From: Macrostomum hystrix
Lineage: Eukaryota; Animalia; Platyhelminthes
Assembly (NCBI GenBank): GCA_950097015.1
Contig: CATNEN010000025.1
Span: forward strand, 868,001 to 932,000
DNA length: 64,000 nucleotides
Reading direction: 5' to 3'
Shown here piece by piece: positions 2,973-61,315 of this stretch. The position numbers were made by a program, and so were the translations under genes. Below the pieces are notes generated by a model, which saw only the letters and a list, made by a program, of their open reading frames with translations, had not been told where the DNA came from and did not search any database. Position 1 is the first letter of the stretch; every line of letters starts with the position of its first letter.

Positions 2973-5900
2973 ATGCACCGAAAGCGCCGTGGTAGAGAGC
3001 CCGACTCGTCGGCCAACAACCAAACCAAGCCGAGCCGGCAGCAAAACTTCCTGCAGACCTGGGACCGGAGTCGCGACCACCGGGACAGAGAGTTGCCAGT
3101 CACGAATCACCGACGTCATCATTCGCATCAGTCAAAACAGGAGACATCATACGCGAATGTGGACAGTTCGACTTCGTCGGGTGGTTCTGACAAGTACTCC
3201 ACTGTCAGGAGGCGCTCTTTGACCTACGTACCAACGTCCGCCTGGGTGAAAGACTTCAAAGACGAAGACGACACTGATGCTTATGGCAGCATAAGAAATA
3301 CTTCCTCGAATAGGTCTCCAGATTCTGAAATACTATTTTGTGCGTCTAAAAGTTGCTCGCCAGTTCAGCAGAAGACAACTGTCGTGTCGAAACAATTAGT
3401 TATTGTGCAACAGGAGCCAGTACCACCACGGCCGCCGCCACGGGCAAACCGCAATCAGCAGCAATCAGCGCGGATTCCACCGTTAGCGTTAGCGACCCCA
3501 TCTGCATTGGTAACACAGCCTTCACAAAGTCCGCCTTCGGCATCAGCGATCCAGCCACCGACACCGCCTCGAGCGCCACGTCCACCGCCTCGAAAATTCC
3601 TGCCAAATCGGCCACCGCCACCGCCACCATCACCATCGCCTCCTTCGTCGCAGCTACCACTACCATCACCGAAGATGATGACACCAAAACCGTCCTCGGC
3701 ACCACATAAGCTCTCACCACAGATGCCATTACCACCGTCTCTGAAGCCCCCTTCGAAGCCACCTCCTCCACCGCGGAGCGCATCTGCTTCTGTTAAAAAA
3801 GATTCATTCGCTTCTGACGTGGTGTCTGACCACAGTCGGGTGCCCCAGTGTGAGCCGCACGTAGCATCTACGATAACGCGCCAGGCACTGGCAGGCAGCA
3901 CGCGCCATGCCGTCGACATGGAGATTGCAGCTACGGCTTCATCTAAGACGGAGACGAAAAAACGCCGCGTACTAAGTCAACCATCTGAGGTAGCACTGTT
4001 GCTGCACGAGATTCTAGTGGGCGGGGCAATCCGCGCGGGCGCTGGAGAGACAATGCCAGCTGAAGGGTCCATGCCTGGAAAATCGACTCACGGCTCTGGA
4101 GTAAGTCGTGCTAATAAAGACAAGTTAAAGAAGGAATCCCAGAAACTGTCAAAGAAGTCAACGAAGATGCGTAGCTACTCGTCTGAGTCGAAAATAGTGC
4201 ACATTCTGGCTGAGATCATAGCTGAGAACATAAGCCGGGCTGATCGTCACAAGTGCAAGCAGAATGGGCAGGGTGATTCAATACCTAGAAACTGCAAATC
4301 TCTTGCGGAGCCCACGAAGGTGAGTAGCAGAACCGAAATAAATAAAAAGGCTGCGAAAGCCAGACAGCACAGTAAACATAAAGACGCCGCTGCTACCGAT
4401 AAATGTGTTTGCCGCCAGCAGAACTTCAACAATTGTTTTAATAAGCCGCATAAAATTAGAAACAGAAGGTGGCTTTGCCAAACTCATGCCCTCTGCATGC
4501 GATCTGTCAGTCGCAGTCGAATTGGCGATCGCTGTGGCTCTGAAGCAGTTTTATTGGGCAGATTTTCAGCAGACATGCGAGGATCAGTGTTGCCTAGATC
4601 ATCGCTACTATCGCTTTGTCGAATGCCCGTCAGAACTTCAAGCGAGTGTGGGGTAAGACTTCTTCATCGACCAAACGCATCGAAACGCAGAGCCAACAGT
4701 CGACATAGTTTGTTTTTTGAAACAAGTATTTGTTCATCGCGAGTGCACTCGACTGCGACGCCAGTTTCCATTAGCAGCCTGAAGCTAGAGGACACCCGCA
4801 ACCGCTCCAGATCGCGCTCTACAGATGAAGCGATTGCCAGTGTACGCTCAGAAACGCCAGAGTTAAGCACGGATGCCATCAATTTTGTGCAGGTGGGCGT
4901 TATCGCCGCGCTTACTAGCAGCTCATCGCAAGCAGTATTGCTAGAGATTTCGTCAGATTCGCGGACAGTGGCCGGTAGGCAGTGCCAGCACTATTGGAAG
5001 CGAAATGTGGATGACTCCATGTCGCAGGCTGCAACCTCAACAGCTGCTAGCATTGAGGAGTTGTTCGGTTGCATTTTGAACGGTCGCGACGAGTCGAACC
5101 TTCTGCTACCCATGGAGGATACGGAGGTGACAAGCCTGAAGTCCGTGCCAGCTGACACTGGGTCCGAGTTTCGGTACGGTGACCGCATAGAGACGCAGCC
5201 TATGATTCAAATCCTTGTTCCAGAGTCATTGCGCATATCAGAGCGAGATGCAGTGTTGGACACGGAAGCCACCCAGCTTCTGAGGGAGTGCTCAAATTCT
5301 GAATGCACCTATTTTAGTAGCAAGACTGAACAATTGAAACTTTCCAGAAGAAGTTCTACACTTTCATCGAAATTTTCAGCCGGTAAGTCTGGCCTGCTGT
5401 CCAAGTCTAATATTGAGGTGGAGAGTGCTCTAGAATCCAACTGGGTTGCAACGCTGCCGGCCCGGCCTTGGATCGACCGCGAAAACTTCAACGGCGCGGT
5501 AAAAATCACCGAAAGGAAGCAGACCACGCTTGGTCGCAGAAGTCGAGTTCAAATAGTACTGCCGCTTGCAGAAGCTATTCAACATCAGATCGAACTACCT
5601 AGCTGCATCGTTGAACAAAGCTTTAGCTCGTGGCGACCTCTGAAATATGTTCAGCAGCTGAAGCTGAACCTGCCAATCGTCACCCCCGAGATTACAACAC
5701 CTGTGTCGATCAGCCAGACGATAAATATCGTCGGTCGTTTTAGTGAGTCCGAGGTCACTAAAAGTGTCATTCGGACTAAAGTCTGCTGCAGAGCTAGTAG
5801 CCCGAAATTTACATTTGCTAGATGCGTTGCATCGCGAATAGTTAATTTTTCAATAGTGAGATACCATCTTCTGGGCTCGTCAATTGAATTGGCAGGCGAC

Positions 5901-6551
5901 CTATTTAATATATCGCTGCTTAAAACGACGAATCGCTCAGAAGCGAACGATGGATCCAAAGTCGGTCGGCACCAGCAATGCGCAAGCCAGTATGATTTTC
6001 CTCCTCATTTTATTGACTTGACTTGGCCACCCTGCTGCTTCAATTGGGCTTCCGAGCGCCCCGCTAACCATGTTAACAATGATCGCATTGAACTGCTGAG
6101 AGTGGCAACCAACCTGGCTATACAATGCCACGCGAACCAAATCAGTCAGGAATCAGGCGTGAACAAATGTCTGGCGAACCCACTGAAAGATGTCGTTTTT
6201 AAATTATTAAGCCCCACCGAAAGCTCACTAAGACTTAAGCCAGTCATCCAGCAAGGATTGGTTGCCAAAGTCTTTAAAAGGATCTCTAAAAACTGTAGGC
6301 TGCGCAATATCATCTTACATTGTCCAGAGCTAGTCATCAATCAGATCTTTGCCGGCGTGTCGCAGGCGGGAGCTGCTGACAGCTCATTTAGTACTCTGGA
6401 CAAACAGACGCAGCTCGGCTACTCAATGCAGAATATGCAAAAAGAAGTTCAACAGCGACAACAACCACGACAGCTGCAAGATCCATATTCAAAGAAGCGA
6501 TTCAAATATTTAAAGCCTGAATTACAGATAAAGACAACAGCGAGAGGTTGA
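2973..6551 (+). CDS. 1192-aa single-exon hypothetical protein, Pro/Ser-rich N-terminus, no recognisable domain
   Basis: 3.6-kb stop-free ORF of non-repetitive sequence. Acceptor-like ATTTTAG ends at 2897. Composition matches the other exons. Confidence 0.75.
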   Translation: MHRKRRGREPDSSANNQTKPSRQQNFLQTWDRSRDHRDRELPVTNHRRHHSHQSKQETSYANVDSSTSSGGSDKYSTVRRRSLTYVPTSAWVKDFKDEDDTDAYGSIRNTSSNRSPDSEILFCASKSCSPVQQKTTVVSKQLVIVQQEPVPPRPPPRANRNQQQSARIPPLALATPSALVTQPSQSPPSASAIQPPTPPRAPRPPPRKFLPNRPPPPPPSPSPPSSQLPLPSPKMMTPKPSSAPHKLSPQMPLPPSLKPPSKPPPPPRSASASVKKDSFASDVVSDHSRVPQCEPHVASTITRQALAGSTRHAVDMEIAATASSKTETKKRRVLSQPSEVALLLHEILVGGAIRAGAGETMPAEGSMPGKSTHGSGVSRANKDKLKKESQKLSKKSTKMRSYSSESKIVHILAEIIAENISRADRHKCKQNGQGDSIPRNCKSLAEPTKVSSRTEINKKAAKARQHSKHKDAAATDKCVCRQQNFNNCFNKPHKIRNRRWLCQTHALCMRSVSRSRIGDRCGSEAVLLGRFSADMRGSVLPRSSLLSLCRMPVRTSSECGVRLLHRPNASKRRANSRHSLFFETSICSSRVHSTATPVSISSLKLEDTRNRSRSRSTDEAIASVRSETPELSTDAINFVQVGVIAALTSSSSQAVLLEISSDSRTVAGRQCQHYWKRNVDDSMSQAATSTAASIEELFGCILNGRDESNLLLPMEDTEVTSLKSVPADTGSEFRYGDRIETQPMIQILVPESLRISERDAVLDTEATQLLRECSNSECTYFSSKTEQLKLSRRSSTLSSKFSAGKSGLLSKSNIEVESALESNWVATLPARPWIDRENFNGAVKITERKQTTLGRRSRVQIVLPLAEAIQHQIELPSCIVEQSFSSWRPLKYVQQLKLNLPIVTPEITTPVSISQTINIVGRFSESEVTKSVIRTKVCCRASSPKFTFARCVASRIVNFSIVRYHLLGSSIELAGDLFNISLLKTTNRSEANDGSKVGRHQQCASQYDFPPHFIDLTWPPCCFNWASERPANHVNNDRIELLRVATNLAIQCHANQISQESGVNKCLANPLKDVVFKLLSPTESSLRLKPVIQQGLVAKVFKRISKNCRLRNIILHCPELVINQIFAGVSQAGAADSSFSTLDKQTQLGYSMQNMQKEVQQRQQPRQLQDPYSKKRFKYLKPELQIKTTARG

Positions 6552-37093: not shown

Positions 37094-37513
37094 ATGCTAG
37101 ACCCGGTGGCAGTGTACGACCTGCTAGTTAAACTGGCCGATCAGGAGGGCATTCGGGTCACTGTTAAGCAGTCGGCTAAGGGCGCCGCAATTGCCGGCAC
37201 AGGCGCCTTTGTCGGCGGCCTAATCGGCGGTCCTGTTGGCGTGGCGGTCGGCGCTACACTCGGCGGCCTGACAGGCATGTGGGCCACAGCTGGCACATTT
37301 GAGCCGCTGGCTGTTGTACTCAAACGGCTGCCAAAGGAGAAACGCGACCAACTGTTGGACTCAACTATGGATCTGTTGCGCGGCCTGGATGTTAGCGATG
37401 CGGCTCTTCTGGCAAGCTTACTGGCTAGCAACATGGATTTGAGAAGTCAGGTGTTGGCTCAGTTAACTGGCTTCGCTACTGAGCAGCTGGGCTTGATGCT
37501 GCAGCCGTCATAG
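37094..37513 (+). CDS. C19orf12: C19orf12/Nazo-family glycine-zipper membrane protein
   Basis: LLVKLADQEGIRVTVKQSAKGAAIAGTGAFVGGLIGGPVGVAVGATLGGL...FEPLAVVLKRLP matches the family pattern. Intronless, 139 aa. Confidence 0.9.
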   Translation: MLDPVAVYDLLVKLADQEGIRVTVKQSAKGAAIAGTGAFVGGLIGGPVGVAVGATLGGLTGMWATAGTFEPLAVVLKRLPKEKRDQLLDSTMDLLRGLDVSDAALLASLLASNMDLRSQVLAQLTGFATEQLGLMLQPS

Positions 37514-38032: not shown

Positions 38033-38091
38033 AATATTTAATCATCGAATCATTCTACTCTTATTAGAGTATCCCACCAAAAAATTTCCAG

Positions 38092-40108
38092 GCTACCAGC
38101 GTCAGTCCTGTTGATATTAGCAACGCCCTAGCAGCGGCGGATGAGTTTTTACACTTTAAACGCCTCTGTGGCGGCGGTAGCGGCGGCGACTTTGATCTAA
38201 TCAATCGACTATTGGCGCAACAGTTGCGCACCACCGCAGACTGCGACGCTTTTGTCGGAGTGGACGGCGTCGCCTACAAGCTGGCCGGCTATCTGGCTGG
38301 TCGACGCGCCGACGAAGCTCTGCTTGCTGGCCACCTTCTGCTACGCCTGACTGCCAGGTGTAGCGCGAACTCAATCACTGAGCTGCTGCGCCAGGCTGGG
38401 CCCTACTGTATTGGCCACGCCACTGGCGGTGGCGGCCTTATTCAACGCTTGTGCCTAATAATTTTAATTAATTGTTGTCGCGCAAGTGTCGCTCTAGGCG
38501 GTCGACTAGTTCGTCTAGGCCTATTGGATGCCTGTTTAATTGGCCTTCGATTGGTTAGTGTTAAATGGAACATTAAAGAAGTAGATGATGACAATAGTCT
38601 GCTAGATTTGTACATTCTCGGCTTAGTCAGATTGAGTCGTCTGTGCTGCCTAGCTCAGAGTCGAGCACTACGGGATCTTGTACAACCCCGTCTGGTGTCT
38701 ATGCTGGAAACTGTTAGGCGACTTTGCCAGAGAGCTGCTGACCGACTGGCTGCAGGTGCGTTAACGAAGGCCTATACTTTGATTTTTACTAGAGAGGGCG
38801 GTGGCAAAGCGGTTAGCGCGTTTGCCTCCCACTCCAAGGTGCCTAAGTTCGATTTCGCGGCGAGGCCACATTCATTTGGGGCGCAGCGAGAAAGCTTCGG
38901 GGTTTGTCGTGCAATTTACGCCGTTGAGGGCCAACCTCCAAGGCACAGTGAAAGTGTACACTGGCCTGACGATGAGAAAGTCAGGGCAGATGTACACACC
39001 TGTATGAGCGTGTGCCTGCGTACGGTATCTGTTCTTGTGTGCTCAGGAGTCCGCGAAATGGGCAGAATTGCCTCCTCGCTGGCTGTGGGTCTAGTGTCAC
39101 CAAATGATGTGCCATTGCCTGCAGCCCTCCCGTAAGTTATTATTATATTATACGGATTGTTACTAGTTTATTGCTATTTTAATTTTTCGAAATGCGCTTG
39201 TACTCTACTGATAGTAGCTAGTACTAGAGTTTAATTTTGTGACTAAAAATTACTTCTTTGAACACAAATCCGCAGGCATCGTTGATCCAGCCCTCTGCCA
39301 GCCATTCTTCGCTGCCTGTTGTCTTCAGCAGGCCTTCTTAACCGCTCCTAATCAAGACAGCCAACCAATGGAACTGCTGACACCTCAGCATCCCGTATTG
39401 CTAGCCAATCTGGCTACGTCTATCGACCAGTCGAGCGAAGCATCGGCCGCGGCTGTCTCACTCGGTCGTGGACTTCGCTGCTGCGCCGCCCGATCCGCCT
39501 ACCTAGTGTCGGCCGATGCTGCTAGCTCATCAGTGCAGCCGCAGCTAGCCTGCGAACTAGTTAGACAGCTGGCCGAATTGGCTGTTCGACATCAGGCTTC
39601 GGTTGAGGCCGGCGATCTACTAGTTGCCGTTGTTAAACTCGCATCGTCGATAGCGGAGTCGGGACTACTGTCTGAGGTGGCGGGCTCGGCGCTGCTCAGA
39701 CTGGGCACTTGCGCGCCAAACTGGCTGGGCCGACGCGGCTGCGGCCTGACAGAGATGGCGCTCCGTTTGGCAGCCGATCAGCTGATTCGAATGCCCGAGA
39801 GTAACACTGCGGACGCTTCCGCAGCTGCTGAATTGTCAAATCTAGTGACAGCTTGTCAAGCCTGTCTGGGTTCCTCACTGCCCTCTGCTGCTGCTGCCGT
39901 TTCTGCCGACGGTGGTGGCATCGGCGATCGAATCCTAGTGCCGACTTTGCACCTGTTGGCGCTGATTAAGCGTCGTCTAGGCGCGGATTATTGGCTTAGT
40001 CTGACCGGCGGCAATCGGCTCTTGAATCGATTGCTGGCCGACTGCAGCGGACTGGTTGCTTCAGCCGCCGAGCACACCGCTTATTTGATGGACTCAAAAC
40101 TGCAGTGA
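38092..40108 (+). CDS. Leu/Ala-rich alpha-helical (ARM/HEAT-like) hypothetical protein lacking a cognate start ATG
   Basis: Exon 38092-38755 is open from the acceptor TTTCCAG. A phase-1 GT-AG intron 38756-39275 contains a SINE. Exon 39276-40108 continues in frame. The fold assignment is inferred from composition only. Confidence 0.7.
38800..39150 (+). mobile_element. SINE family A, near full length, intronic
   Basis: tRNA head GTGGCAAAGCGG...GTTCGATTTC, conserved body and TTA tail. Confidence 0.9.
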
Positions 40109-40815: not shown

Positions 40816-43800
40816 ATGGGCGGCGGACACGTGCCAGAGCCAACCAGAGAGTCGCTTTATGAGCCGCTAAAGAATCCGCAATTTAACGAGACCTGGCTCT
40901 ACAAAGCCTTGGATATTCCTACTGATTGGTTTAAGCGCAATGTTACTGATCGATTTCGGCAAAAATATCCCTATTATCATCAGCGATTTCCACGAGTGCC
41001 CACCATCGACCAGTGCTACGTTGACGACCACATCTGCTTTCTAGAGGCCAATGAACAGTACAAGCGAGATCGGTCAGTGAATTTCTATAATCTGCATCCT
41101 AATTGTCATAATCTGCATCCTATTTGTCATAATCTGCATCCTATTTGTCATAATCTAAATCCTAGTTATCATTATCTGCACCGTAATTGTCATAATCTGC
41201 ATCCTAGTTATCATAATCTGCATCCTAGTTATCATAATCTGCATCCTAGTTATCATAATCTGCATCCTAGTTATCATAATCTGCATCCTATTTGTCATAA
41301 TCTAAATCCTAGTTATCATTATCTGCACCGTAATTGTCATAATCTGCATCCTAGTTATCATAATCTGCATCCTAGTTATCATAATCTGCATCCTAGTTAT
41401 CATAATCTGCATCCTATTTGTCATAATCTGCATCCTAGTTATCATTATCTGCATCCTAGTTATCATAATCTGCATCCTAATTGTCATAATCTGCATCCTA
41501 GTTATCATAATCTGCATCCTAATTGTCATAATCTGCATCCTATTTGTCATAATCTGCATCCTATTTGTCATAATCTAAATCCTAGTTATCATTATCTGCA
41601 CCGTAATTGTCATAATCTGCATCCTAGTTATCATAATCTGCATCCTAGTTATCATAATCTGCATCCTAGTTATCATAATCTGCATCCTTTTTGTCATAAT
41701 CTGCATCCTAATTGTCATAATCTGCATCCTAGTTATCATAATCTGCATCCTAATTGTCATAATCTGCATCCTATTTGTCATAATCTGCATCCTATTTGTC
41801 ATAATCTAAATCCTAGTTATCATTATCTGCACCGTAATTGTCATAATCTGCATCCTAGTTATCATAATCTGCATCCTAGTTATCATAATCTGCATCCTAG
41901 TTATCATAATCTGCATCCTAGTTATCATAATCTGCATCCTAGTTATCATAATCTGCATCCTAGTTATCATAATCTGCATCCTAATTGTCATAATCTGCAT
42001 CCTATTTGTCATAATCTGCATCCTATTTGTCATAATCTGCATCCTAGTTATCATATTCTGCACCGTAATTGTCATAATCTGCATCCTAGTTATCATAATC
42101 TGCATCCTAGTTATCATAATCTGCATCCTATTTGTCATAATCTAGATCCTAGTTATCATAATCTGCATCCTAGTTATCATAATCTGCATCCTAGTTATCA
42201 TAATCTGCATCCTAGTTATCATATTCTGCATCCTAGTTATCATAATCTGCATCCTATTTGTCATAATCTAGATCCTAGTTATCATAATCTGCATCCTAGT
42301 TATCATAATCTGCATCCTTTTTGTCATAATCTGCATCCTAATTGTCATAATCTGCATCCTAATTATCATATTCTGCATCCTAATTATCGGCATCCATTCC
42401 GCGCCATTGTCATGGCAACCAACTGACGCCTGGCCTTGAATCTCCGCAGGCTGGTCGACCTGGAGATCGTCCACATTCTGCGCAGGCGGCAGGCCCAGTG
42501 CTTCAAATGGTACGGCAGGCAGCGCGACCTGGCCGAGAAGCACTGCGCCCAGATTATGAAGGACTACGACGAGAGTAAGAGGCTTTGAGTACCAACCTTC
42601 CTTGGGACTGTGTCTTGGAGAGTGACAGTGACTGTGTCTTGGAGAGTGACTGTGTCTTGGAGAGTGACAGTGACTGTCTTGGAGAGTGACAGTGACTGTG
42701 TCTTGGAGAGTGACAGTGACTGTGTCTTGGAGAGTGACAGTGACTGTGTCTTGGAGAGTGACAGTGACTGTGTCTTGGAGAGTGACAGTGACTGTGTCTT
42801 GGAGAGTGACAGTGACTGTGTCTTGGAGAGTGACAGTGACTGTGTCTTGGAGAGTGACAGTGACTGTGTCTTGGAGAGTGACAGTGACTGTGTCTTGGAG
42901 AGTGACAGTGACTGTGTCTTGGAGAGTGACAGTGACTGTGTCTTGGAGAGTGACAGTGACTGTGTCTTGGAGAGTGACAGTGACTGTGTCTTGGAGAGTG
43001 ACAGTGACTGTGTCTTGGAGAGTGACAGTGACTGTGTCTTGTAGAGTGACAGTGACTGTGTCTTGGAGAGTGACAATGACTGTGTCTTGGAGAGTAACAG
43101 TGACTGTGTCTTGGAGAGTGACAGTGACTGTGTCTTGGAGAGTGGCAGTGACTGTGTCTTGGAGAGTGACAGTGACTGTCTTGGAGAGTGACAGTGACTT
43201 TGTCTTGGAGAGTGACAGTGACTTATTGAATGAGAGTGACAGTGACTTATTGAATGAGAGTGATAGTGACTTATTGTAGGAGAGTGACAGTGACTTATTG
43301 TAGGAGAGTGACAGTGACTTATTGTAGGAGAGTGACAGTGACTTATTGTAGGAGAGTGACAGTGACTTATTGTAGGAGAGTGACAGTGACTTATTGTAGG
43401 AGAGTGACAGTGACTTATTGTAGGAGAGTGACAGTGACTTATTGTAGGAGAGTGACAGTGACTTATTGTAGGAGAGTGACAGTGACTTATTGAATGAGAG
43501 TGACAGTGACTTATTGTAGGAGAGTGACAGTGACTTATTGAATGAGAGTGACAGTGACTGTCTTGGAGAGTGACAGTGACTGTGTCTTGGAGAGTGACAG
43601 TGACTGTGTCTTGGAGAGTGACAGTGACTTATTGAATGAGAGTGACAGTGACTTATTGAAGGAGAGTGACAGGCATTGATTGATGGAGAGTGACAGTCAC
43701 ATGTCCCTAACCAATTGTTCCCGCAGCCTCCACCAACTACTTCATCAAGTACGGCGACATGGGCGTTCACTACAACGTTAAGAACGCTTTGATGAAGCAG

Positions 43801-43977
43801 AAGCACCGGATGCTGTGGGAGCAGAAACACGGCGAAGTTGGCAGCCGCGGAGATCCCAACAGATTTCCGAACAATGCCGATCCCCAACCTGGCTCGCTGG
43901 ATCACGAGGACACCCTGGTTGGCAATCTGCGCAAGTTCAACTCCCACGTAAAAAATCCCAAAGAGATGGCCCCCTAA
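40816..43977 (+). CDS. NDUFB10: NADH:ubiquinone oxidoreductase subunit B10 (PDSW)
   Basis: Exons 40816-41072, 42450-42574, 43727-43977 (phases 2 and 1). YYHQRFPRVPTIDQCYVDDHICFLEANEQYKRDR|LVDLEIVHILRRR..C...KYGDMG...ALMKQKHRM. Confidence 0.93.
41085..42380. repeat. 21-nt minisatellite in NDUFB10 intron 1 (CATAATCTGCATCCTAGTTAT)
   Basis: About 60 copies. Confidence 0.97.
42605..43700. repeat. 24-nt minisatellite in NDUFB10 intron 2 (GAGAGTGACAGTGACTGTGTCTTG, switching to ...TTATTGTAG)
   Basis: About 45 copies in two subtypes. Confidence 0.97.
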
Positions 43978-54664: not shown

Positions 54665-55480
54665 CGTCTAACTTGTAAAAGATTGCCCCAGCTTCCACGA
54701 TATCCGTCTTCCAGCTTGTGAATGATTCCAACTTCCAGCTTCCATGAAATCCAGCTTGTCAAAGATTGCGCCAGCTTCCACGATATCCAGCATGTGAAAG
54801 ATTGCGCCAGCTTCCATTAAATCCAGCTTGTGAAAGATTGCGCCAGCTTCCATTAAATCCAGCTTGTGAAAGATTGCGCCAGCTTCCATTAAATCCAGCT
54901 TGTGAAAGATTGCGCCAGCTTCCATTAAATCCAGCTTGTGAAAGATTGCGCCAGCTTCCATTAAATCCAGCTTGTGAAAGATTGCGCCAGCTTCCATTAA
55001 ATCCAGCTTGTGAAAGATTGCGCCAGCTTCCATTAAATCCAGCTTGTGAAAGATTGCGCCAGCTTCCATTAAATCCAGCTTGTGAAAGATTGCGCCAGCT
55101 TCCATTAAATCCAGCTTGTGAAAGATTGCGCCAGCTTCCATTAAATCCAGCTTGTGAAAGATTGCGCCAACTTCCACGATATCCAGCTTGTGAAATATTG
55201 CGCCTGCTTCCACGATATTCATTTTCCAGCTTGTAAAGATTGCACCAGCTGCCAAACATCCAGCTTCCAGCTTGTAAAAGATTCCACCAGCTGTCAAACA
55301 TCCAGCTTGTAAAAGATTGCACCAGCTGTCAAACATCCAGCTTGTAAAAGATTGCACCAGCTGCCAAACATCCAGCTTGTAAAAGATTGCACCAGCTGTC
55401 AAACATCCAGCTTCCAGCTTGTTAAAGACTGCACCAATTTTGACAATATCGATCATTTAGCTTGTGAAGGAATTGTGCCA
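54665..55480. repeat. 36-nt minisatellite (CCAGCTTCCATTAAATCCAGCTTGTGAAAGATTGCG)
   Basis: About 11 near-identical central copies with degenerate flanks. Confidence 0.95.
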
Positions 55481-55707
55481 GCTATCAAGGCATTCATCGT
55501 CCGGTTTGTGAAAGATTGCGCTAACTTGCACGATATCAATCTCACGATAAGATAGTAGCAAATTTCACGCATTCATATTTTATCTTTAAGCCTCTTTAAA
55601 ATCGATCGAGAACCATTAATCTCAGCAACTGTTAGGACTAAAAATTAAATAAACTTTGCCTGACATTCAGGCGCACACACAAAGTCCTGAGCTGCATACG
55701 AACTAGC

Positions 55708-57330
55708 ATGCCATCGGGCAACACTGACAGTTGTGACAGCCGCGGCTTCCGCTGCTACTACGATCTGCTGCAGATTGATCCGGCTGTCAGCCAGGCCGAG
55801 TTGCGCCGAGCCTATCGGCATCAGGCCCTGATCTGGCATCCGGACAAGCAGCCGACGCCTGAACTTGCGACCGCCTCCGCCGAACAATTCCGACAAATTC
55901 AACGAGCCTATGAGATACTGAGCGATCCGCGCACCAGAGCCTGGTACGACGAGAATCGGCAGCGAATTCTGCGGCGTGGTGGTAGATCCAAGCGCCCGCC
56001 TGACGCAGGCGCGGAATCAGCCGCCGCTTCTGTCAACATTTTCGAATACTTTCCACCGGGCTGCTATCGCGATTATAGCGACGGACCTGGTGGATTTTTC
56101 AGCGTCTACAATGGACTGTTTGACCGGCTGGCTGCGGAGTTCACGCAGTCAATGAGCACGAACGGAATGGGCGACTCTGTCCCGCCACCGCCTATGCCAG
56201 GTTAGCTTAAGTTGTCTAGGGGATAAACTCCCACGAACTCTTCTACTTCCAAGTGAAACTCCTGCTCCAGTTATTAGCATGCTTCAGCATCACTCAACCC
56301 CTCTTCTCAATCTACCCCTACTCTCACTCTACATCTCTTCTCACTCTACATCTCTTCTCACTCTGCCCCTCTTCTCACTCTACATCTCGTCTCACTCTCC
56401 ATCTCTTCTCCCTCTACCCCTCTTCTCACTCTACATCTCTTCTCACTCTACATCTCTTCTCACTCTACATCTCTTCTCACTCTACATCTCGTCTCACTCT
56501 ACATCTCTTCTCACTCTGCCCCTCTTCTCACTCTACCCATCTTCTTAATCTACCCTCTTCTTCTCACTCTACCCTCTTCTCAATCTACCCCTCTTCTACG
56601 TACTCTACTTCTATTCTCACTCAACACCTCTTCTCATTCTGCCCCTACTCTCTCACTACCCCTCTTCTCCCTCTCTCCCTCTCTCACTGTTAGGGTTCTG
56701 AGAAAGTTTGAGCAGTAAATCACAGTGCAATCTCAATCCACCGCAGCATTCGGCAGGTCGGACTCAGACTTCGAATCGGTGGTTGCGCCATTCTACTCCA
56801 GCTGGGAGGCTGCGGCTGCGGCCTCGGCCAATCAGCAGAGCCGCAGCGAAGAGATTCGGGTCCTAATCGCATTTGTCAAGGCCTGGGATCCGCGAGTGCT
56901 TAATTGGCGACTGAAGGCGGCATCGAATTTAATAACCGGCTTAGCCGAAGAGGAGGCAGTCCGTGCCTCAGTTGGTAGGTCTGTGCAAGCCGGTCTCTTT
57001 GTCTGCCTCGGTGCTCTGATTGGCGGCGGCTTATCGTCATCTTCTACTAGTAGAGGCGGCAGTTACGGCCTGGCGCTGGGCGCAGCCTTCGCTGGCGCCG
57101 CCTACGCCCTGCTCAGTTGGGGCCAGTTTGTTTCGCTAGCCGAAGCTCTGCGCCTGATGCCGGCGGAGAAGAGGACGCGCTTGGCGGAGCTCACTCTGGA
57201 CACTATGCGAGAGGTGAACGCCATGGACACGGCTACCTGGGCGTCGCTGATTGTCACTGACGCCGCCTTCCGTGCCCGACTGCTCAGCCAGGCTAGAGAG
57301 TTCGCTTGCGGTAAAACTACTCATGATTAG
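55708..57330 (+). CDS. Chimeric protein: DNAJC21-derived J-domain fused to a C19orf12-like membrane domain
   Basis: Exons 55708-56200 and 56747-57330, with a phase-1 intron at the same position as in DNAJC21. J domain RCYYDLL...WHPDK. The C-terminal ~130 aa aligns end to end with the C19orf12 at 37094. Confidence 0.85.
56270..56690. repeat. ~17-nt CT-rich minisatellite in the chimera intron (CTCTACATCTCTTCTCA)
   Basis: Degenerate tandem copies. Confidence 0.9.
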
Positions 57331-57669
57331 TCTGCAGCGGCTGGCCATGGGACTCTGGGATGAAAAACTGGGAGATGAAGTACTCTTGTGATTGACTATA
57401 TGACCTGCATTTTAACTGTAAATTATAGTTTTTATTATGTGGGCATGTAGTTAATGATTACATTAATCTATCTGTGTCAACGCAATTTATCTGCTGTACT
57501 CTTAACTTAAATCAATATTGCGTAGTAACAACTCTGTTGCCTACTACTATATAATTACCTAATTAATAAGAAACTGTCATTTAAATTTATATTTTTTGAA
57601 GCTCTAATTTCTCAGCGATCCGGACAAACTGCCCCCACCCGCTGTTGGACCCAACAGCTGTCAGAAATT

Positions 57670-58085
57670 ATGAGACACGGGAGAGATGAGACACGTGAAA
57701 GATGAGACACGGGTAGAGATCAGACACGTGAGAGATCAGACACGGGAGAGATCAGACACGGGTAGAGATCAGACACGGGAGAGATCAGACACGGGAGAGA
57801 TCAGACACAGGAGAGATGAGACACGGGACAGATGAGACACGGGAGAGATGAGACACGGGAGAGATGAGACACGGGAGAGATGAGACACGGGAGAGATCAG
57901 ACACGGGAGAGATCAGACACGGGAGAGATCAGACACGGGAGAGATGAGACACGTGAGAGATCAGACACGGGAGAGATCAGACACGTGAGAGATCAGACAC
58001 GGGAGAGATCAGACACGGGAGAGATCAGACACGGGAGAGATCAGACACGTGAGAGATCAGACAGATCAGACAGATCAGAGAGATC
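57670..58085. repeat. 16-nt purine-rich minisatellite (GAGAGATCAGACACGG)
   Basis: About 25 copies between the chimera and DNAJC21. Confidence 0.93.
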
Positions 58086-58456: not shown

Positions 58457-61315
58457 ATGACTTCGACCGATCCGAAAAGCGGCGGAGTTCGCTGCTACTA
58501 CGACCTGTTGGAAGTTGAGCGTCAGGCAACTGACGACGAATTAAAGAAGGCCTACAGGCGCCTGGCGTTACGCTGGCATCCAGATAAGAATCCAGACCGC
58601 GTTGAGGAGGCCACCGCTCATTTCCGATTGGTTCAGAAGGCCTACGAGACTCTCTCTGATCCGCAGGAGCGAGCCTGGTACGACAAGCACCGGGAGCGCA
58701 TTCTCAAAGGCGGCCTCGGGCGCGGCGAGGCCTACCAGGAGGAGCGGCTGGACGTATTTCAATACTTCACCTCGGCTTGCTACGATGATTATGACGACGG
58801 CGAAGAGGGCTATTTCACTGTGTACGCCAAGGTGTTCAACGATCTGGCCGAGGAGGAGAGGCGGGCCTGCGACGGAGACGACGAGCCGCCGCCAGATTTT
58901 CCAGGTTGGTGCCACCACAGATTGACATTTCAGACTGTATGACAAATTTATTGTTGCTCCTAAATACTCAAGTACATTAATGTGTCCTGGACTTCATATA
59001 GATCCTCAGGTACATTAATGTGTCCTGGACTTCATTTAGATCCTCAGGTACATTAATGTGTCCTGGACTTCATTTAGATCCTCAGGTACATTAATGTGTC
59101 CTGGACTTCATTTAGATCCTCAGGTACATTAATGTGTCCTGGACTTCATATAGATCCTCAGGTATATTAATGTGTCCTGGACTTCATATAGATCCTCAGG
59201 TACATAAATGTGTCCTGGACTTCATATAGATCCTCAGGTACATTAATGTGTCCTGGACTTCATATAGATCCTCAGGTACATTAATGTGTCCTGGACTTCA
59301 TATAGATCCTCAGGTACATTAATGTGTCCTGGACTTCATATAGATCCTCAGGTACATTAATGTGTCCTGGACTTCATATAGATCCTCAGGTACATTAATG
59401 TGTCCTGGACTTCATATAGATCCTCAGGTACATTAATGTGTCCTGGACTTCATATAGATCCTCAGGTACATTAATGTGTCCTGGACTTCATATAGATCCT
59501 CAGGTACATTAATGTGTCCTGGACTTCATATAGATCCTCAGGTACATTAATGTGTCCTGGACTTCATTTAGATCCTCAGGTACATAAATGTGTCCTGGAC
59601 TTCATTTAGATCCTCAGGTACATTAATGTGTCCTGGACTTCATACAGATCCTCAGGTGAATATTATTAACTTCCCAGATCATCAGGTTGATATTATAAGC
59701 TTCCCAAATCCCAAGGTAGATATTATAAACTTCCTGAATCCTCAGGTTGATATTATAAGCTTTCCAAATCCTCAGGTTGATATTATAAGCTTTCCAAATC
59801 CTCAGGTTGATATTATAAGCTTTCCAAATCCTCAGGTTGATATTATAAGCTTTCCAAATCCTCAGGTTGATATTATAAGCTTTCCAAATCCTCAGGTTGA
59901 TATTATAAGCTTTCCAAATCCTCAGGTTGATATTATAAGCTTTCCAAATCCTCAGGTTGATATTATAAACTTCCCAAATCGTCAGGTTGATACTAATGTC
60001 TTTCTATAGATCATAATTGCAAGCTTCGAGTATATTGTGACAAAACATTGCAGAATTCGGTCGCTCCGACTCGCCCTACGACAATGTTGTTGGCCCCTTC
60101 TACTCCCACTGGGAGACCTTCTTCACTCGCAAATCCTACGTCTGGGTGGAGAAGTACGACACCAGGGAGGCGCCGAATAAGTACGCCCGCAAGGCCATGG
60201 AGAAGGAGAACCGGGCAGCCAGGGACGCCGCTAGGCGGGAGCGCAACGAAGAGGTGCGCACCCTGGTGGCATTCGTTAAGAAGCGCGATCCCCGCGTTGT
60301 AGCCGAACGACGCCGACTAGAGGCTCGGGCTCGCGAAGTTGAAGCCAAAGCCAAGGCCATGGCCTCGGCGGCTCGCCGGGCTCACCTGGAGACCGCCAGT
60401 CGTTACCAGGCCCCGGCCTGGGCTCGCACCGACGAGTTGGAGGCCGAACTCGCCAAGATCGAAGCCGAGCACGGCGCCGGGGCGTCCGATTTCGACGATT
60501 CCGACGACGATCAGGTAGCTGACCAAGGAGGTGAAGGAATTGTTGAAGACGGCGAGGCGGTGGATAATCGAGCAGCCGAGGCTGAAGCAGAATCAGACAA
60601 TGAGCTGATGTGCTTAGTCTGCGAGAAAATGTTCCGCACTCCGGGTGCCAAGCAGAGCCACGACCGTTCCAAGCGGCACCGGGAACGCCTGGAACTGCTG
60701 CGCGCTGAGATGGCCAGGCACGATCGAGTTGAATTGTTGACATCAAGCGAACAACAAGCCGAACAGGGAGGTCGAGTTCCAGACGAGCACGGCGACGAAG
60801 AGGAAGATGAATCTACGGAGGCGACCAAGAAATCTAAAAGCGGCAAGAAGAACAACAAAAAGAATAAGAAGCGTCAGCAGCTTCAGTTGAACGACTCGGA
60901 CAAAGAAGATCAGAAAGAGCAGAACGAGGAAGCTGATGCAGGCAATGCCAAGGAGGTCGCTGTGGAGAGCGCAGGCTCCAATGATGACGAAGACGAAGCA
61001 TCTAAGCAGGCTTCGTCGTCGAAGAAGCCTCGCCGCAGGAAGGATCGTCAGCGACAGAAACAGCAGGAGCTGCTTGAACAGCGACGCCAGGAGGTGGCCG
61101 AGGCGGCTGCTGATGGCGCCGATGGCGTCGCTAACTCGGTTACTCAGGTGTGCAAATCCTGTCGACAATGGTTCGAATCGAAGAATGCGCTATTCAAGCA
61201 TTTGAAGGAGAGCGGCCATGCGGCGGTTAAGCCTGGAGCAGCAGCTGCCGCCGCCGCTGCCGCCGCATCGTCTGCGCGGACAGATAGTAAAAAGTCTAAC
61301 AGTAAGCGCAAGTAA
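58457..61315 (+). CDS. DNAJC21: DnaJ homolog subfamily C member 21 (Jjj1-like: J domain plus two C2H2 zinc fingers)
   Basis: Exons 58457-58904 and 60054-61315 (phase 1). HPD motif, FGRSDSPY...FYSHW, LVAFVKKRDPRV, CLVCEKMF...HDRSKRH, CKSC...LFKHLKESGH. Confidence 0.95.
58965..59995. repeat. Compound minisatellite in the DNAJC21 intron (38-nt then 30-nt units)
   Basis: GATCCTCAGGTACATTAATGTGTCCTGGACTTCATATA (about 18 copies), then CCTCAGGTTGATATTATAAGCTTTCCAAAT (about 11 copies). Confidence 0.96.

What the first reader, a model, noticed from the sequence alone, without database searches (positions are those of the whole stretch)
55708..57330. Intact chimeric gene: DNAJC21 J-domain fused to a C19orf12/Nazo membrane domain, with relatives of both parents nearby
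Seen: exon 1 is a paralog of DNAJC21 exon 1 (RCYYDLL...HPDK...AYEILSDP..RAWYD..R.RIL, then the F.YF...CY.DY.D...G.F.VY...F..LA.E block), and the phase-1 intron sits at the same position. Exon 2 begins like DNAJC21 (FGRSDS.F..VV.PFYS.W), lacks the ~35-aa WVEKYD...AARRE segment and keeps EEIR.LIAFVK..DPRV. From ~56929 it switches to sequence collinear with C19orf12 at 37094: LITGLAEEEAVRASV vs LLVKLADQEGIRVTV; GGSYGLALGA vs GGPVGVAVGA; FVSLAEALRLMPAEKR vs FEPLAVVLKRLPKEKR; ASLI...FRARLLSQ vs ASLL...LRSQVLAQ. Both zinc fingers are lost. Both halves are strongly diverged yet the frame and HPD are intact, arguing for an old, retained gene. Established: DNAJC21/Jjj1 is a 60S-maturation Hsp70 co-chaperone, and C19orf12 is an ER/mitochondria-associated glycine-zipper protein (MPAN gene; Drosophila Nazo is an antiviral/lipid effector). 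Inference: a new membrane-tethered Hsp70 recruiter. I know of no such architecture.
Basis: partly seen in the sequence, partly recalled or inferred. Interest (0 to 1): 0.9.

Follow-up and report, generated by a model that had tools for sequence, protein, structure and literature searches.

The report
Flatworm J-domain–C19orf12 fusion gene
A flatworm (Macrostomum) genome carries a real, transcribed and evolutionarily conserved gene that joins the Hsp70-recruiting J-domain end of the ribosome-assembly factor DNAJC21 to a copy of the membrane protein C19orf12, a domain combination I found nowhere else.

Summary
A two-exon gene (55708-56200 and 56747-57330, + strand, phase-1 GT..AG intron) encodes 358 aa.

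- **N-terminal part:** an intact J domain (HPD at 55837-55845) plus DNAJC21-like sequence. The core of the zuotin-homology domain and both zinc fingers are missing.
- **C-terminal part:** a complete but diverged C19orf12 domain. Pfam scores below its cut-off, but a profile-profile comparison gives 99.5% probability, E 6e-23.
- **Parents:** both lie in the window. DNAJC21 is directly downstream and has its intron at the same site and phase. C19orf12 lies 18.6 kb upstream.
- **Transcription:** transcript-like contigs from three public runs (one study) remove exactly this intron. One 1493-nt contig spans the whole reading frame.
- **Conservation:** Macrostomum lignano has the same gene in the same gene order on two contigs, annotated only as "hypothetical protein".
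- **Selection:** omega is 0.05-0.25 in every module. The protein still changes about 7 times faster than parental DNAJC21.

The function is inferred only: an Hsp70 co-chaperone anchored to ER or mitochondrial membranes by the C19orf12 hairpin and no longer serving the ribosome. I found no paper on it and no such architecture outside Macrostomum. It is a new variant of known kinds.

The parts
55400..55502 (+). 5'UTR exon. It extends upstream of 55400 in contigs of X5 and X6; the X4 contig starts at 55444.
   Evidence: Contig pieces, table 8. No upstream ATG in the spliced or unspliced leader.
55503..55669 (+). 5'UTR intron (GT..AG, 167 nt). Spliced out in X5 and X6, retained in X4.
   Evidence: table 5 (joint 55502>55670) and table 8.
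55708..56200 (+). Coding exon 1 (aa 1-164 plus the first base of codon 165). Derived from DNAJC21 exon 1.
   Evidence: 46% identity to 58457-58904, E 2e-44.
55756..55950 (+). J domain (aa 17-81), with HPD at 55837-55845.
   Evidence: Pfam DnaJ PF00226, 73.1 bits against cut-off 27.8, E 1.9e-20. Foldseek matches to solved J domains.
56032..56142 (+). Post-J block shared with DNAJC21 (F.YF..GCY.DY.DG..GFF.VY..LF..LA.E).
   Evidence: Alignments. AF2 pLDDT is about 95 here in the M. lignano orthologue.
56201..56746 (+). Phase-1 intron (546 nt, GT..AG), mostly a 17/51-nt tandem repeat. Same site and phase as the DNAJC21 intron 58905-60053.
   Evidence: (joint in 3 runs).
56747..57330 (+). Coding exon 2 (aa 165-358 plus the stop TAG).
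56749..56898 (+). Remnant of the zuotin-homology domain (aa 166-215). The FGRSDS..FYS.WE and EEIR.LIAFVK..DPRV ends are kept. The 44-aa core is replaced by 13 aa at 56809-56847.
   Evidence: alignment. No PF21884 hit in the chimera at E<=1, whereas the parent and P0019 hit it.
56899..56922 (+). Junction zone (LNWRLKAA) between DNAJC21-derived and C19orf12-derived sequence. It lies inside exon 2 with no intron.
   Evidence: The BLASTP alignment with C19orf12 starts at aa 222. The DNAJC21 alignment ends at DPRV. The exact breakpoint is inferred.
56917..57309 (+). C19orf12-like domain (aa 222-352), collinear with residues 6-129 of the 139-aa parent.
   Evidence: best C19orf12 hit P0004, E 1.1e-8 against 1.84 billion proteins; hhalign 99.5%; 13 of 22 informative family-conserved columns kept.
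56989..57033 (+). Hydrophobic helix 1 of the hairpin (AGLFVCLGALIGGGL). The first glycine-zipper motif is kept as GALIGGG.
   Evidence: Kyte-Doolittle maximum 2.05. Helix in the AF2 model of the orthologue.
57064..57120 (+). Hydrophobic helix 2 of the hairpin (YGLALGAAFAGAAYALLSW). Two glycines of the second zipper are replaced by alanine.
   Evidence: Kyte-Doolittle maximum 1.9. Column table.
57331..57482 (+). 3'UTR. Contigs end at 57481-57499.
   Evidence: table 8.
58457..61315 (+). Parent 1: canonical DNAJC21 (exon 1 58457-58904, exon 2 60054-61315; 570 aa; J domain, ZHD and two C2H2 fingers).
   Evidence: About 95% identical to M. lignano DNAJC21 over the parts compared, omega 0.04-0.05.
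37094..37513 (+). Parent 2: canonical single-exon C19orf12 homologue (139 aa).
   Evidence: Pfam PF20721, 88.4 bits, E 5.9e-25. 75.5% identical to M. lignano P0004, omega 0.115.

Best explanation
This is a lineage-specific, functional chimeric gene of macrostomid flatworms.

Origin (inferred from the anatomy): a tandem DNA-level duplicate of DNAJC21 kept its first exon and the shared phase-1 intron. Its exon 2 was then truncated just after the zuotin-homology region and joined in frame to a copy of nearly the whole coding sequence of the neighbouring C19orf12 gene.

Product (shown): an intact J domain with HPD, a conserved DNAJC21-type post-J helical module, a gutted zuotin-homology domain, no zinc fingers, and a C19orf12 domain. 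The C19orf12 domain keeps its two Gly/Ala-rich hydrophobic helices and its soluble helices.

Mechanism (inferred):
- The C19orf12 hairpin anchors the protein in ER or outer mitochondrial membranes, with both ends in the cytosol.
- The J domain therefore stimulates ATP hydrolysis by cytosolic Hsp70 at that membrane. It may act next to canonical C19orf12, through zipper-mediated helix packing.
- The parental role at the pre-60S ribosome has been given up.

I put the gene being real, expressed and under selection at about 0.9, and the membrane-tethered Hsp70-recruiter mechanism at about 0.5.
For: - Gene model and in-window homology to both parents.
- Same intron site and phase as DNAJC21.
- Spliced transcript contigs in three runs. 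One contig covers the full ORF, and the 5'UTR intron is alternatively retained, which argues for RNA rather than a retrocopy.
- Orthologues of 359 and 362 aa in M. lignano with the same intron site and phase. Gene order there is C19orf12 - gene without Pfam hit - NDUFB10 - Ras-like - BCAS2 - chimera, with DNAJC21 next downstream on the contig where that part was read (L001).
- Purifying selection in each module. NG86 omega is 0.12-0.23 and YN00/ML 0.05-0.25. Uncorrected pN/pS never reached 1 in 1000 bootstraps.
- In the N-half tree the chimeras group with Macrostomum DNAJC21 (89/100).
- The C half is a C19orf12 homologue. phmmer hits to C19orf12-like proteins run from E 1.1e-8 (best, P0004) to 6.6e-4, and hhalign gives 99.5%.
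- The ZHD core and the zinc fingers are absent.
- The hydrophobic hairpin is retained and at least as hydrophobic as in the parent.
- From the literature, C19orf12 is an ER/mitochondria membrane protein with glycine-zipper helices, and its soluble parts bind cytosolic partners: PMC4470416, PMC13751628.
Against: - No protein-level, localisation or ATPase data exist. All functional steps are inferred.
- The chimera evolves fast. dN against M. lignano is 0.29, compared with 0.035-0.05 for DNAJC21 and 0.16 for C19orf12.
- The few variants seen among transcript contigs are 8 nonsynonymous to 3 synonymous, including G126R in a conserved motif. Constraint is therefore modest.
- Pfam C19orf12 stays below its gathering score in all three chimeras, at 19-25 bits against 30.
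- Several family-invariant glycines and the GGP turn are altered, and 4-7 residues including an arginine are inserted in the hairpin loop. Membrane insertion is plausible but not assured.
- The runs that carry the spliced form are not on record as RNA.
Confidence: 0.6

Rival explanations
1. The C19orf12 module is not membrane-inserted here. The protein would be a soluble J-protein whose C19orf12-type helical domain serves as a partner- or client-binding module. It might bind canonical C19orf12, or the flatworm counterparts of its cytosolic partners, and deliver them to Hsp70.
For: - The hairpin helices are Ala/Gly-rich and only moderately hydrophobic (Kyte-Doolittle maxima about 2).
- Invariant glycines and the GGP turn are changed, and a polar loop containing an arginine is inserted.
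- Human C19orf12 is described as present in cytosol as well as membranes, and as binding Miro1 and Kif5b directly (PMC4470416 and PMC13751628).
Against: - Both hydrophobic segments are kept in both species and are at least as hydrophobic as in the membrane-bound parents.
- The small-xxx-small spacing is preserved through G to A changes.
- AF2 models a helix-turn-helix at that place.
Confidence: 0.17
2. The protein still works at the ribosome, as a membrane-anchored ribosome-associated J-protein. The conserved post-J module and the ZHD remnant would dock on 60S subunits or on ribosomes at the ER surface.
For: - The post-J block and both ends of the ZHD are the best-conserved and best-modelled parts (pLDDT about 95).
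- The nearest predicted structures are J+ZHD proteins of the DNAJC21/Jjj1 type, TM 0.45-0.47 over about 210 residues.
Against: - The basic core of the ZHD (44 aa) is gone, and PF21884 no longer scores at all.
- Both zinc fingers and the charged C-terminal half of DNAJC21 are absent.
- An intact DNAJC21 under strong constraint sits next door.
- The structural match partly reflects the DNAJC21 rows in the input alignment.
Confidence: 0.1
3. It is a transcribed but functionally dispensable duplicate, slowly decaying, whose open frame has merely survived so far.
For: - Its protein divergence is about 7 times that of DNAJC21.
- Variants among contigs are 8 nonsynonymous to 3 synonymous.
- The two M. 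lignano copies differ by 6 nonsynonymous and 5 synonymous changes plus two indels.
Against: - At synonymous divergence of about 1 or more, an unconstrained 358-codon frame would not stay open in two species and three gene copies.
- pN is about one third of pS in every module, and no bootstrap reached parity.
- HPD, the intron site and the C19orf12 signature columns are all conserved.
Confidence: 0.08
4. It is an artefact: an assembly chimera, a read-through gene model, or two separate genes.
For: Public M. lignano gene models (P0002, P0003, P0026) do wrongly merge BCAS2, this gene and DNAJC21, so this locus is error-prone for annotation.
Against: - Single contigs from three runs carry the exact spliced ORF.
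- Two independent M. lignano contigs carry the same two-exon structure.
- The junction between the modules lies inside one exon, so no splicing or assembly join is needed to create it.
Confidence: 0.02

Closest known systems
DNAJC21 / yeast Jjj1 (cytosolic type III J-protein of 60S subunit maturation)
   Same: The J domain with HPD, the post-J block, both ends of the zuotin-homology domain, and the phase-1 intron site. The gene lies in tandem with DNAJC21 and groups with Macrostomum DNAJC21 in the tree.
   Different: The ZHD core, both C2H2 fingers and the charged C-terminal half are lost. The J-domain loop after HPDK is lengthened. It evolves about 7 times faster. It carries a C19orf12 domain instead.
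C19orf12 / Drosophila Nazo (PF20721; small glycine-zipper membrane protein of ER and mitochondria, mutated in MPAN)
   Same: It is collinear over residues 6-129 of the 139-aa flatworm protein. It has two Gly/Ala-rich hydrophobic helices followed by the soluble helices. V, S, G, F, L, D and R signature columns are kept.
   Different: Identity is only 25-36%, and Pfam is below its cut-off. Family-conserved columns G34, G39, P58 and G68 of the alignment are changed in one or both chimeras. The hairpin loop is lengthened, and the last ~10 residues are replaced. The domain is fused behind 220 residues of J-protein instead of standing alone.
Membrane-anchored J-proteins with cytosolic J domains (e.g. 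DNAJB12/DNAJB14, yeast Hlj1, DNAJC5) - comparison from general knowledge, not tested here
   Same: The proposed logic is the same: a J domain held at a membrane surface activates cytosolic Hsp70 locally.
   Different: They are unrelated in origin, and their anchors are single transmembrane helices, tail anchors or lipid groups. None uses a C19orf12 hairpin. I found no such architecture outside Macrostomum and no paper on it.
Chimeric genes born from local duplication, the classic route to new domain combinations
   Same: Both parents lie within 20 kb. One parent is duplicated in tandem with its intron preserved. One daughter evolves much faster than the other.
   Different: This one is old enough to be shared by two species with saturated synonymous divergence. 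It joins two genes of medical interest.

Membership tests
J-domain proteins (Pfam DnaJ PF00226) | J-domain profile match above the curated cut-off | tested here: met
   73.1 bits against 27.8, E 1.9e-20, aa 17-81. 72.6-73.5 bits in the M. lignano orthologues. Foldseek top hits are solved J domains.
J-domain proteins (Pfam DnaJ PF00226) | HPD tripeptide between helices II and III | tested here: met
   H44-P45-D46 at 55837-55845, conserved in M. lignano.
J-domain proteins (Pfam DnaJ PF00226) | HPD-dependent stimulation of Hsp70 ATPase | not testable with these tools
   Needs a biochemical assay.
DNAJC21 / Jjj1 | Zuotin-homology domain (PF21884) after the J domain | tested here: not met
   No PF21884 hit at E<=1 in the window protein or in P0001/P0017. 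44 core residues are replaced by 13. The parent and P0019 do hit it.
DNAJC21 / Jjj1 | Two C2H2 (JAZ-type) zinc fingers in the C-terminal half | tested here: not met
   None in the chimera. Present in the neighbouring DNAJC21.
DNAJC21 / Jjj1 | Descent from DNAJC21 (tree position, shared intron) | tested here: met
   The clade with Macrostomum DNAJC21 has support 89/100. The phase-1 intron is at the identical site. It is therefore a derived paralogue, not a DNAJC21 orthologue.
C19orf12 (PF20721) | Pfam profile match above the gathering score (30 bits) | tested here: not met
   21.8 bits (window), 24.0-25.6 (P0001) and 19.4 (P0017), with E 1e-5 to 1e-3.
C19orf12 (PF20721) | Homology over the whole domain | tested here: met
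   hhalign against 12 non-Macrostomum family members: 99.5%, E 5.8e-23, 123 columns. The best phmmer hit among C19orf12-like proteins is E 1.1e-8 in 1.84 billion sequences. BLASTP to the window's own C19orf12 gives E 2e-16.
C19orf12 (PF20721) | Two glycine-zipper hydrophobic helices joined by a short GGP turn | tested here: inconclusive
   Both hydrophobic helices are present, and the first motif is kept. In the second, G to A changes give GxxxGxxxA. The P of the turn is lost, and 4-7 residues are inserted.
C19orf12 (PF20721) | Small stand-alone protein of about 140-150 aa | tested here: not met
   The domain is the C-terminal 40% of a 358-aa protein.
C19orf12 (PF20721) | ER / mitochondrial membrane localisation | not testable with these tools
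   Needs tagging and fractionation.

The most novel reading that the evidence does not exclude
The fusion is a Rosetta stone. On this reading, C19orf12-type proteins normally work together with a cytosolic Hsp70/J-protein system at ER-mitochondria membranes, and Macrostomum has hard-wired that partnership into one polypeptide. That would give the orphan MPAN disease protein a testable molecular partner.
Probability: 0.1. Interest if true: 0.75.

Novelty: new variant of a known kind. Interest (0 to 1): 0.52.

Why it matters
C19orf12 is still described as an orphan protein whose loss causes a human neurodegeneration (MPAN). Its molecular activity is debated, with proposals ranging over lipid handling, tubular ER and mitochondrial transport.

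A natural gene that has been kept for a long time and welds a C19orf12 domain to an Hsp70-recruiting J domain does two things:

- It is a clean, datable example of how a membrane-targeted co-chaperone can be built from two neighbouring genes.
- It is a hint, though a weak one because it occurs in a single lineage, that Hsp70 chemistry is useful at the place where C19orf12 sits.

M. lignano has transgenesis and RNAi, so localisation and loss-of-function tests are feasible. The finding also corrects public annotation. The NCBI entries are "hypothetical protein, partial", and the UniProt models merge this gene with BCAS2 and DNAJC21.

Tried and rejected
- **Word-indexed protein search, exon 2:** nothing found. 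The 358-aa full-length protein exceeds the length limit of 1.75 times the query, so the blank means little. The exhaustive HMMER search then found the orthologue.
- **Spliced protein as a query:** it could not be handed to the search tools by reference, so the exons were searched apart and the M. lignano protein P0001 was used as proxy. No search could be made for the window species' own full-length protein in transcriptome collections.
- **Search with P0001:** no further species.
- **Foldseek against the PDB:** only J domains, with no hit for the C19orf12 part.
- **ESM Atlas shape search:** only DNAJC21/Jjj1-type proteins.
- **Tree of the C19orf12 half:** unresolved. The chimera stem is 2.8 changes per site. 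Grouping with Macrostomum C19orf12 appears in the best tree at 32/0 support, so it is neither shown nor rejected. Origin from the local C19orf12 therefore rests on proximity, on the best phmmer hit being M. lignano C19orf12, and on shared details such as the P.EKR motif.
- **Literature searches:** nothing on C19orf12 plus J-domain fusions, on Macrostomum plus DNAJC21, or on the M. lignano gene identifier.
- **Dipteran origin:** considered at first and dropped once the best relatives proved to be M. lignano.
- **Retrocopy origin of the DNAJC21 part:** rejected because the intron is kept.
Full report
**What is there.** On the + strand an ORF opens at ATG 55708 and runs to a G|GT donor after 56200. 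The acceptor CAG| ends at 56746, and the frame continues from 56747 to TAG 57328-57330. Splicing the two pieces gives 1077 nt in frame and a protein of 358 aa. The intron is phase 1, 546 nt long, and mostly a 17/51-nt tandem repeat. The transcribed leader has no upstream ATG, and an in-frame stop lies at 55639.

**Both halves have parents in the same window.** tblastn of the spliced protein against the window gives three matches:
- aa 11-176 against 58478-58939, 44% identity, E 2e-37;
- aa 163-216 against 60047-60301, E 6e-8;
- aa 222-352 against 37109-37480, 32% identity, E 1e-11.

Pfam identifies the downstream gene (58457-58904 plus 60054-61315, 570 aa) as a canonical DNAJC21, with a J domain, a zuotin-homology domain and C2H2 fingers. 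It identifies the ORF at 37094-37513 as a canonical C19orf12 protein at 88 bits. Pairwise BLASTP gives 46% identity and E 2e-44 for exon 1 against DNAJC21 exon 1. It gives 32% identity and E 2e-16 for the C-terminal part against C19orf12.

The DNAJC21 intron is also phase 1 and splits the same codon position...P|(E/A)FGRSDS.... The DNAJC21-derived part therefore arose by DNA-level tandem duplication, not retroposition.

**Anatomy of the product.**
- Exon 1 carries a full J domain (73 bits) with HPD at aa 44-46. It also carries the post-J block typical of DNAJC21.
- Exon 2 starts like DNAJC21 exon 2. The 44-residue core of the zuotin-homology domain is replaced by 13 Ala/Gln/Ser-rich residues, and the terminal EEIR.L.AFVK..DPRV helix is kept. 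Pfam's ZHD model no longer scores at all, and no zinc finger is present.
- From about aa 222 the sequence follows C19orf12 residues 6-129.

Pfam's C19orf12 model hits all three known chimeras only below its cut-off, at 19-25 bits against 30. Three other results settle the homology:
- phmmer against 1.84 billion proteins returns thirteen C19orf12-like proteins of 139-143 aa. Their E-values run from 1.1e-8 (the best, M. lignano's own C19orf12) to 6.6e-4.
- A profile-profile comparison with twelve non-Macrostomum family members gives 99.5% probability, E 5.8e-23, over 123 columns.
- Of the 22 informative family-conserved columns, the window chimera keeps 13, including F292, L310, D325 and R340 in the soluble helices. 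Several glycines are replaced by alanine, the proline of the GGP turn is lost, and the hairpin loop is 4-7 residues longer.

Two hydrophobic segments remain at aa 246-260 and 271-289. They are at least as hydrophobic as those of the parents. In the AF2 model of the orthologue they form a helix-turn-helix (mean pLDDT 78.6, with the N-terminal 210 residues mostly above 90).

**It is transcribed as one spliced message.** Seven public runs hold the stretch. I laid four of them on 55400-57700.
- In runs X4, X5 and X6 (one study, organism B), contigs skip exactly the predicted GT..AG intron.
- One 1493-nt contig covers 55444-56197 joined to 56744-57482. That is leader, complete ORF and 3'UTR.
- A second GT..AG intron in the leader (55503-55669) is removed in X5 and X6 but retained in X4.
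- Only thin low-depth fragments lie in the coding intron.

The runs are not on record as RNA. Two precisely removed introns, one of them used alternatively, are what transcripts give and what a genomic retrocopy does not. All three runs come from one study, so this counts as one line of support.

**It is conserved.** The exhaustive search found a 359-aa protein, 67% identical over all of exon 2, with the same architecture. It is Macrostomum lignano PAA57946.1, annotated "hypothetical protein, partial". A second copy, PAA53278.1, has 362 aa. So the window comes from a macrostomid flatworm closely related to M. lignano, but it is not M. lignano. Organism names are coded in the run tables.

The M. 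lignano loci show the same two exons, the same phase-1 intron site and the same neighbours. The order is RRM gene, C19orf12, a gene without Pfam hit, NDUFB10, Ras-like, BCAS2, chimera. DNAJC21 follows on contig NIVC01002430.1 (L001). On the second contig the next called gene has no Pfam hit. This rules out an assembly chimera and places the fusion before the split of the two species.

**Selection, window against M. lignano.**

| Sequence | dN | dS | omega |
|---|---|---|---|
| Chimera, whole (pN 0.24, pS 0.67) | 0.29 | 1.72 | 0.17 (NG86); 0.18 (YN00); 0.11 (ML) |
| Chimera, J domain | | | 0.16 |
| Chimera, post-J block | | | 0.12 |
| Chimera, ZHD remnant | | | 0.23 |
| Chimera, C19orf12 module | 0.26 | | 0.14 |
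| Parental DNAJC21 (exon 1; first 110 codons of exon 2) | 0.035-0.05 | ~0.96 | 0.04-0.05 |
| Parental C19orf12 | 0.16 | 1.43 | 0.115 |

Synonymous sites are saturated, so I also bootstrapped the uncorrected pN/pS, which overstates omega. No replicate of any module exceeded 0.75. All modules are therefore under purifying selection. The DNAJC21-derived half has changed about 7 times faster than its parent, and the C19orf12 half about 1.6 times faster.

There are two caveats. Variants among the transcript contigs are 8 nonsynonymous to 3 synonymous. The two M. lignano copies differ by 6 nonsynonymous and 5 synonymous changes.

**Origin.** In a tree of the N-terminal 200-270 residues with 37 other DNAJC21-type sequences (molluscs, echinoderms, an arthropod, a fungus and unnamed ones), the three chimeras form one clade (100/99). 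That clade groups with the two Macrostomum DNAJC21 proteins (89/100) on a stem of 1.5 changes per site. The duplication is therefore specific to this flatworm lineage as far as sampled, and was followed by rapid change.

The C-half tree is unresolved. Derivation from the neighbouring C19orf12 is the simplest reading, but it is not proven. No other protein with this architecture turned up among 1.84 billion cluster representatives. That query is a diverged family member, so independent fusions elsewhere cannot be excluded.

**How it most likely works.**

Shown:
- an intact J domain;
- loss of the ribosome-related ZHD core and of the zinc fingers;
- a retained C19orf12 hairpin and soluble helices;
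- transcription, conservation and purifying selection;
- a fully intact DNAJC21 next door.

From the literature, C19orf12 is an ER/mitochondria membrane protein with glycine-zipper helices. Its N- and C-terminal parts form one soluble domain (PMC4470416). It is described as ER-anchored and as binding the cytosolic partners Miro1 and Kif5b (PMC13751628).

Inferred:
- The hairpin places both ends of the C19orf12 module, and hence the N-terminal J domain, on the cytosolic face.
- There the J domain triggers ATP hydrolysis and client capture by cytosolic Hsp70.
- The zipper helices may also pack against canonical C19orf12 and so bring Hsp70 to its complexes.
- The pre-60S role of DNAJC21 is abandoned.

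The rivals are a soluble J-protein that uses the C19orf12 fold as a binding module, a membrane-tethered protein that still binds ribosomes, a slowly decaying duplicate, and an artefact. They are weighed in their own sections.

**Comparison and verdict.** The protein is a derived paralogue of DNAJC21 that fails two of that family's defining features. It is also a diverged homologue of C19orf12 that fails Pfam's cut-off and the stand-alone format. It should be filed under neither family as a plain member. Functionally it resembles membrane-anchored J-proteins with cytosolic J domains, but its anchor is of a different kind.

I found no paper on it. Public annotation treats it as hypothetical, or merges it with its neighbours. 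First readers of this scan have noted several other candidate chimeric genes in this genome. This lowers the surprise of finding one, though those notes are unchecked.

I rate it a new variant of known kinds. It is well supported as a gene, moderately interesting in itself, and more interesting if the link between C19orf12 and Hsp70 proves to be general.

Noticed in passing
window 54735-55413, 56290-56688, 57673-58063: Three minisatellites surround and fill the chimeric gene. A 36/35-nt unit (about 18 copies) runs into the 5'UTR exon. A 17/51-nt unit (about 23 copies) makes up most of the coding intron. A 16-nt unit (about 24 copies) lies between the chimera and DNAJC21.
   Followed up: partly
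window 55503-55669: A GT..AG intron in the 5'UTR is spliced out in contigs of two runs and retained in a third. This looks like alternative splicing of the leader.
   Followed up: partly
P0002, P0003, P0026 (M. lignano UniProt/WormBase models); L001 6419-18458: Public M. lignano gene models of 626, 1008 and 693 aa merge BCAS2, the chimera and DNAJC21 into single, frame-scrambled proteins. The NCBI models (PAA57946.1, PAA53278.1) are correct, but they are labelled hypothetical and partial and start 9 residues upstream of the likely ATG.
   Followed up: partly
window 38065-40108: The gene between C19orf12 and NDUFB10 has no Pfam hit (ORFs 38212-39135 and 39239-40108). Its M. lignano counterpart has 516 aa, also without a Pfam hit. 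Another first-reader note proposes that it starts at a spliced-leader AUG. I did not examine this.
   Followed up: no
window 55982-56083 (variants in run X4): One run carries four nonsynonymous differences within about 100 nt of exon 1: G92D, R93G, K95E and G126R. The last falls in the conserved DGPGG motif. They may mark a divergent allele or strain.
   Followed up: partly
window 2973-6551 and 42268-43947 (-): A 1192-aa ORF has no Pfam match. A 559-aa reverse-strand ORF overlaps the tail of the long NDUFB10-frame ORF and has only a sub-threshold Gp5_trimer_C hit, so it is probably low-complexity repeat sequence.
   Followed up: no
L003 13577-14774: On the second M. lignano contig, the gene called downstream of the chimera copy has 300 aa and no Pfam hit, instead of a recognisable DNAJC21. 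The DNAJC21 copy there may be mis-called, further away or lost.
   Followed up: no
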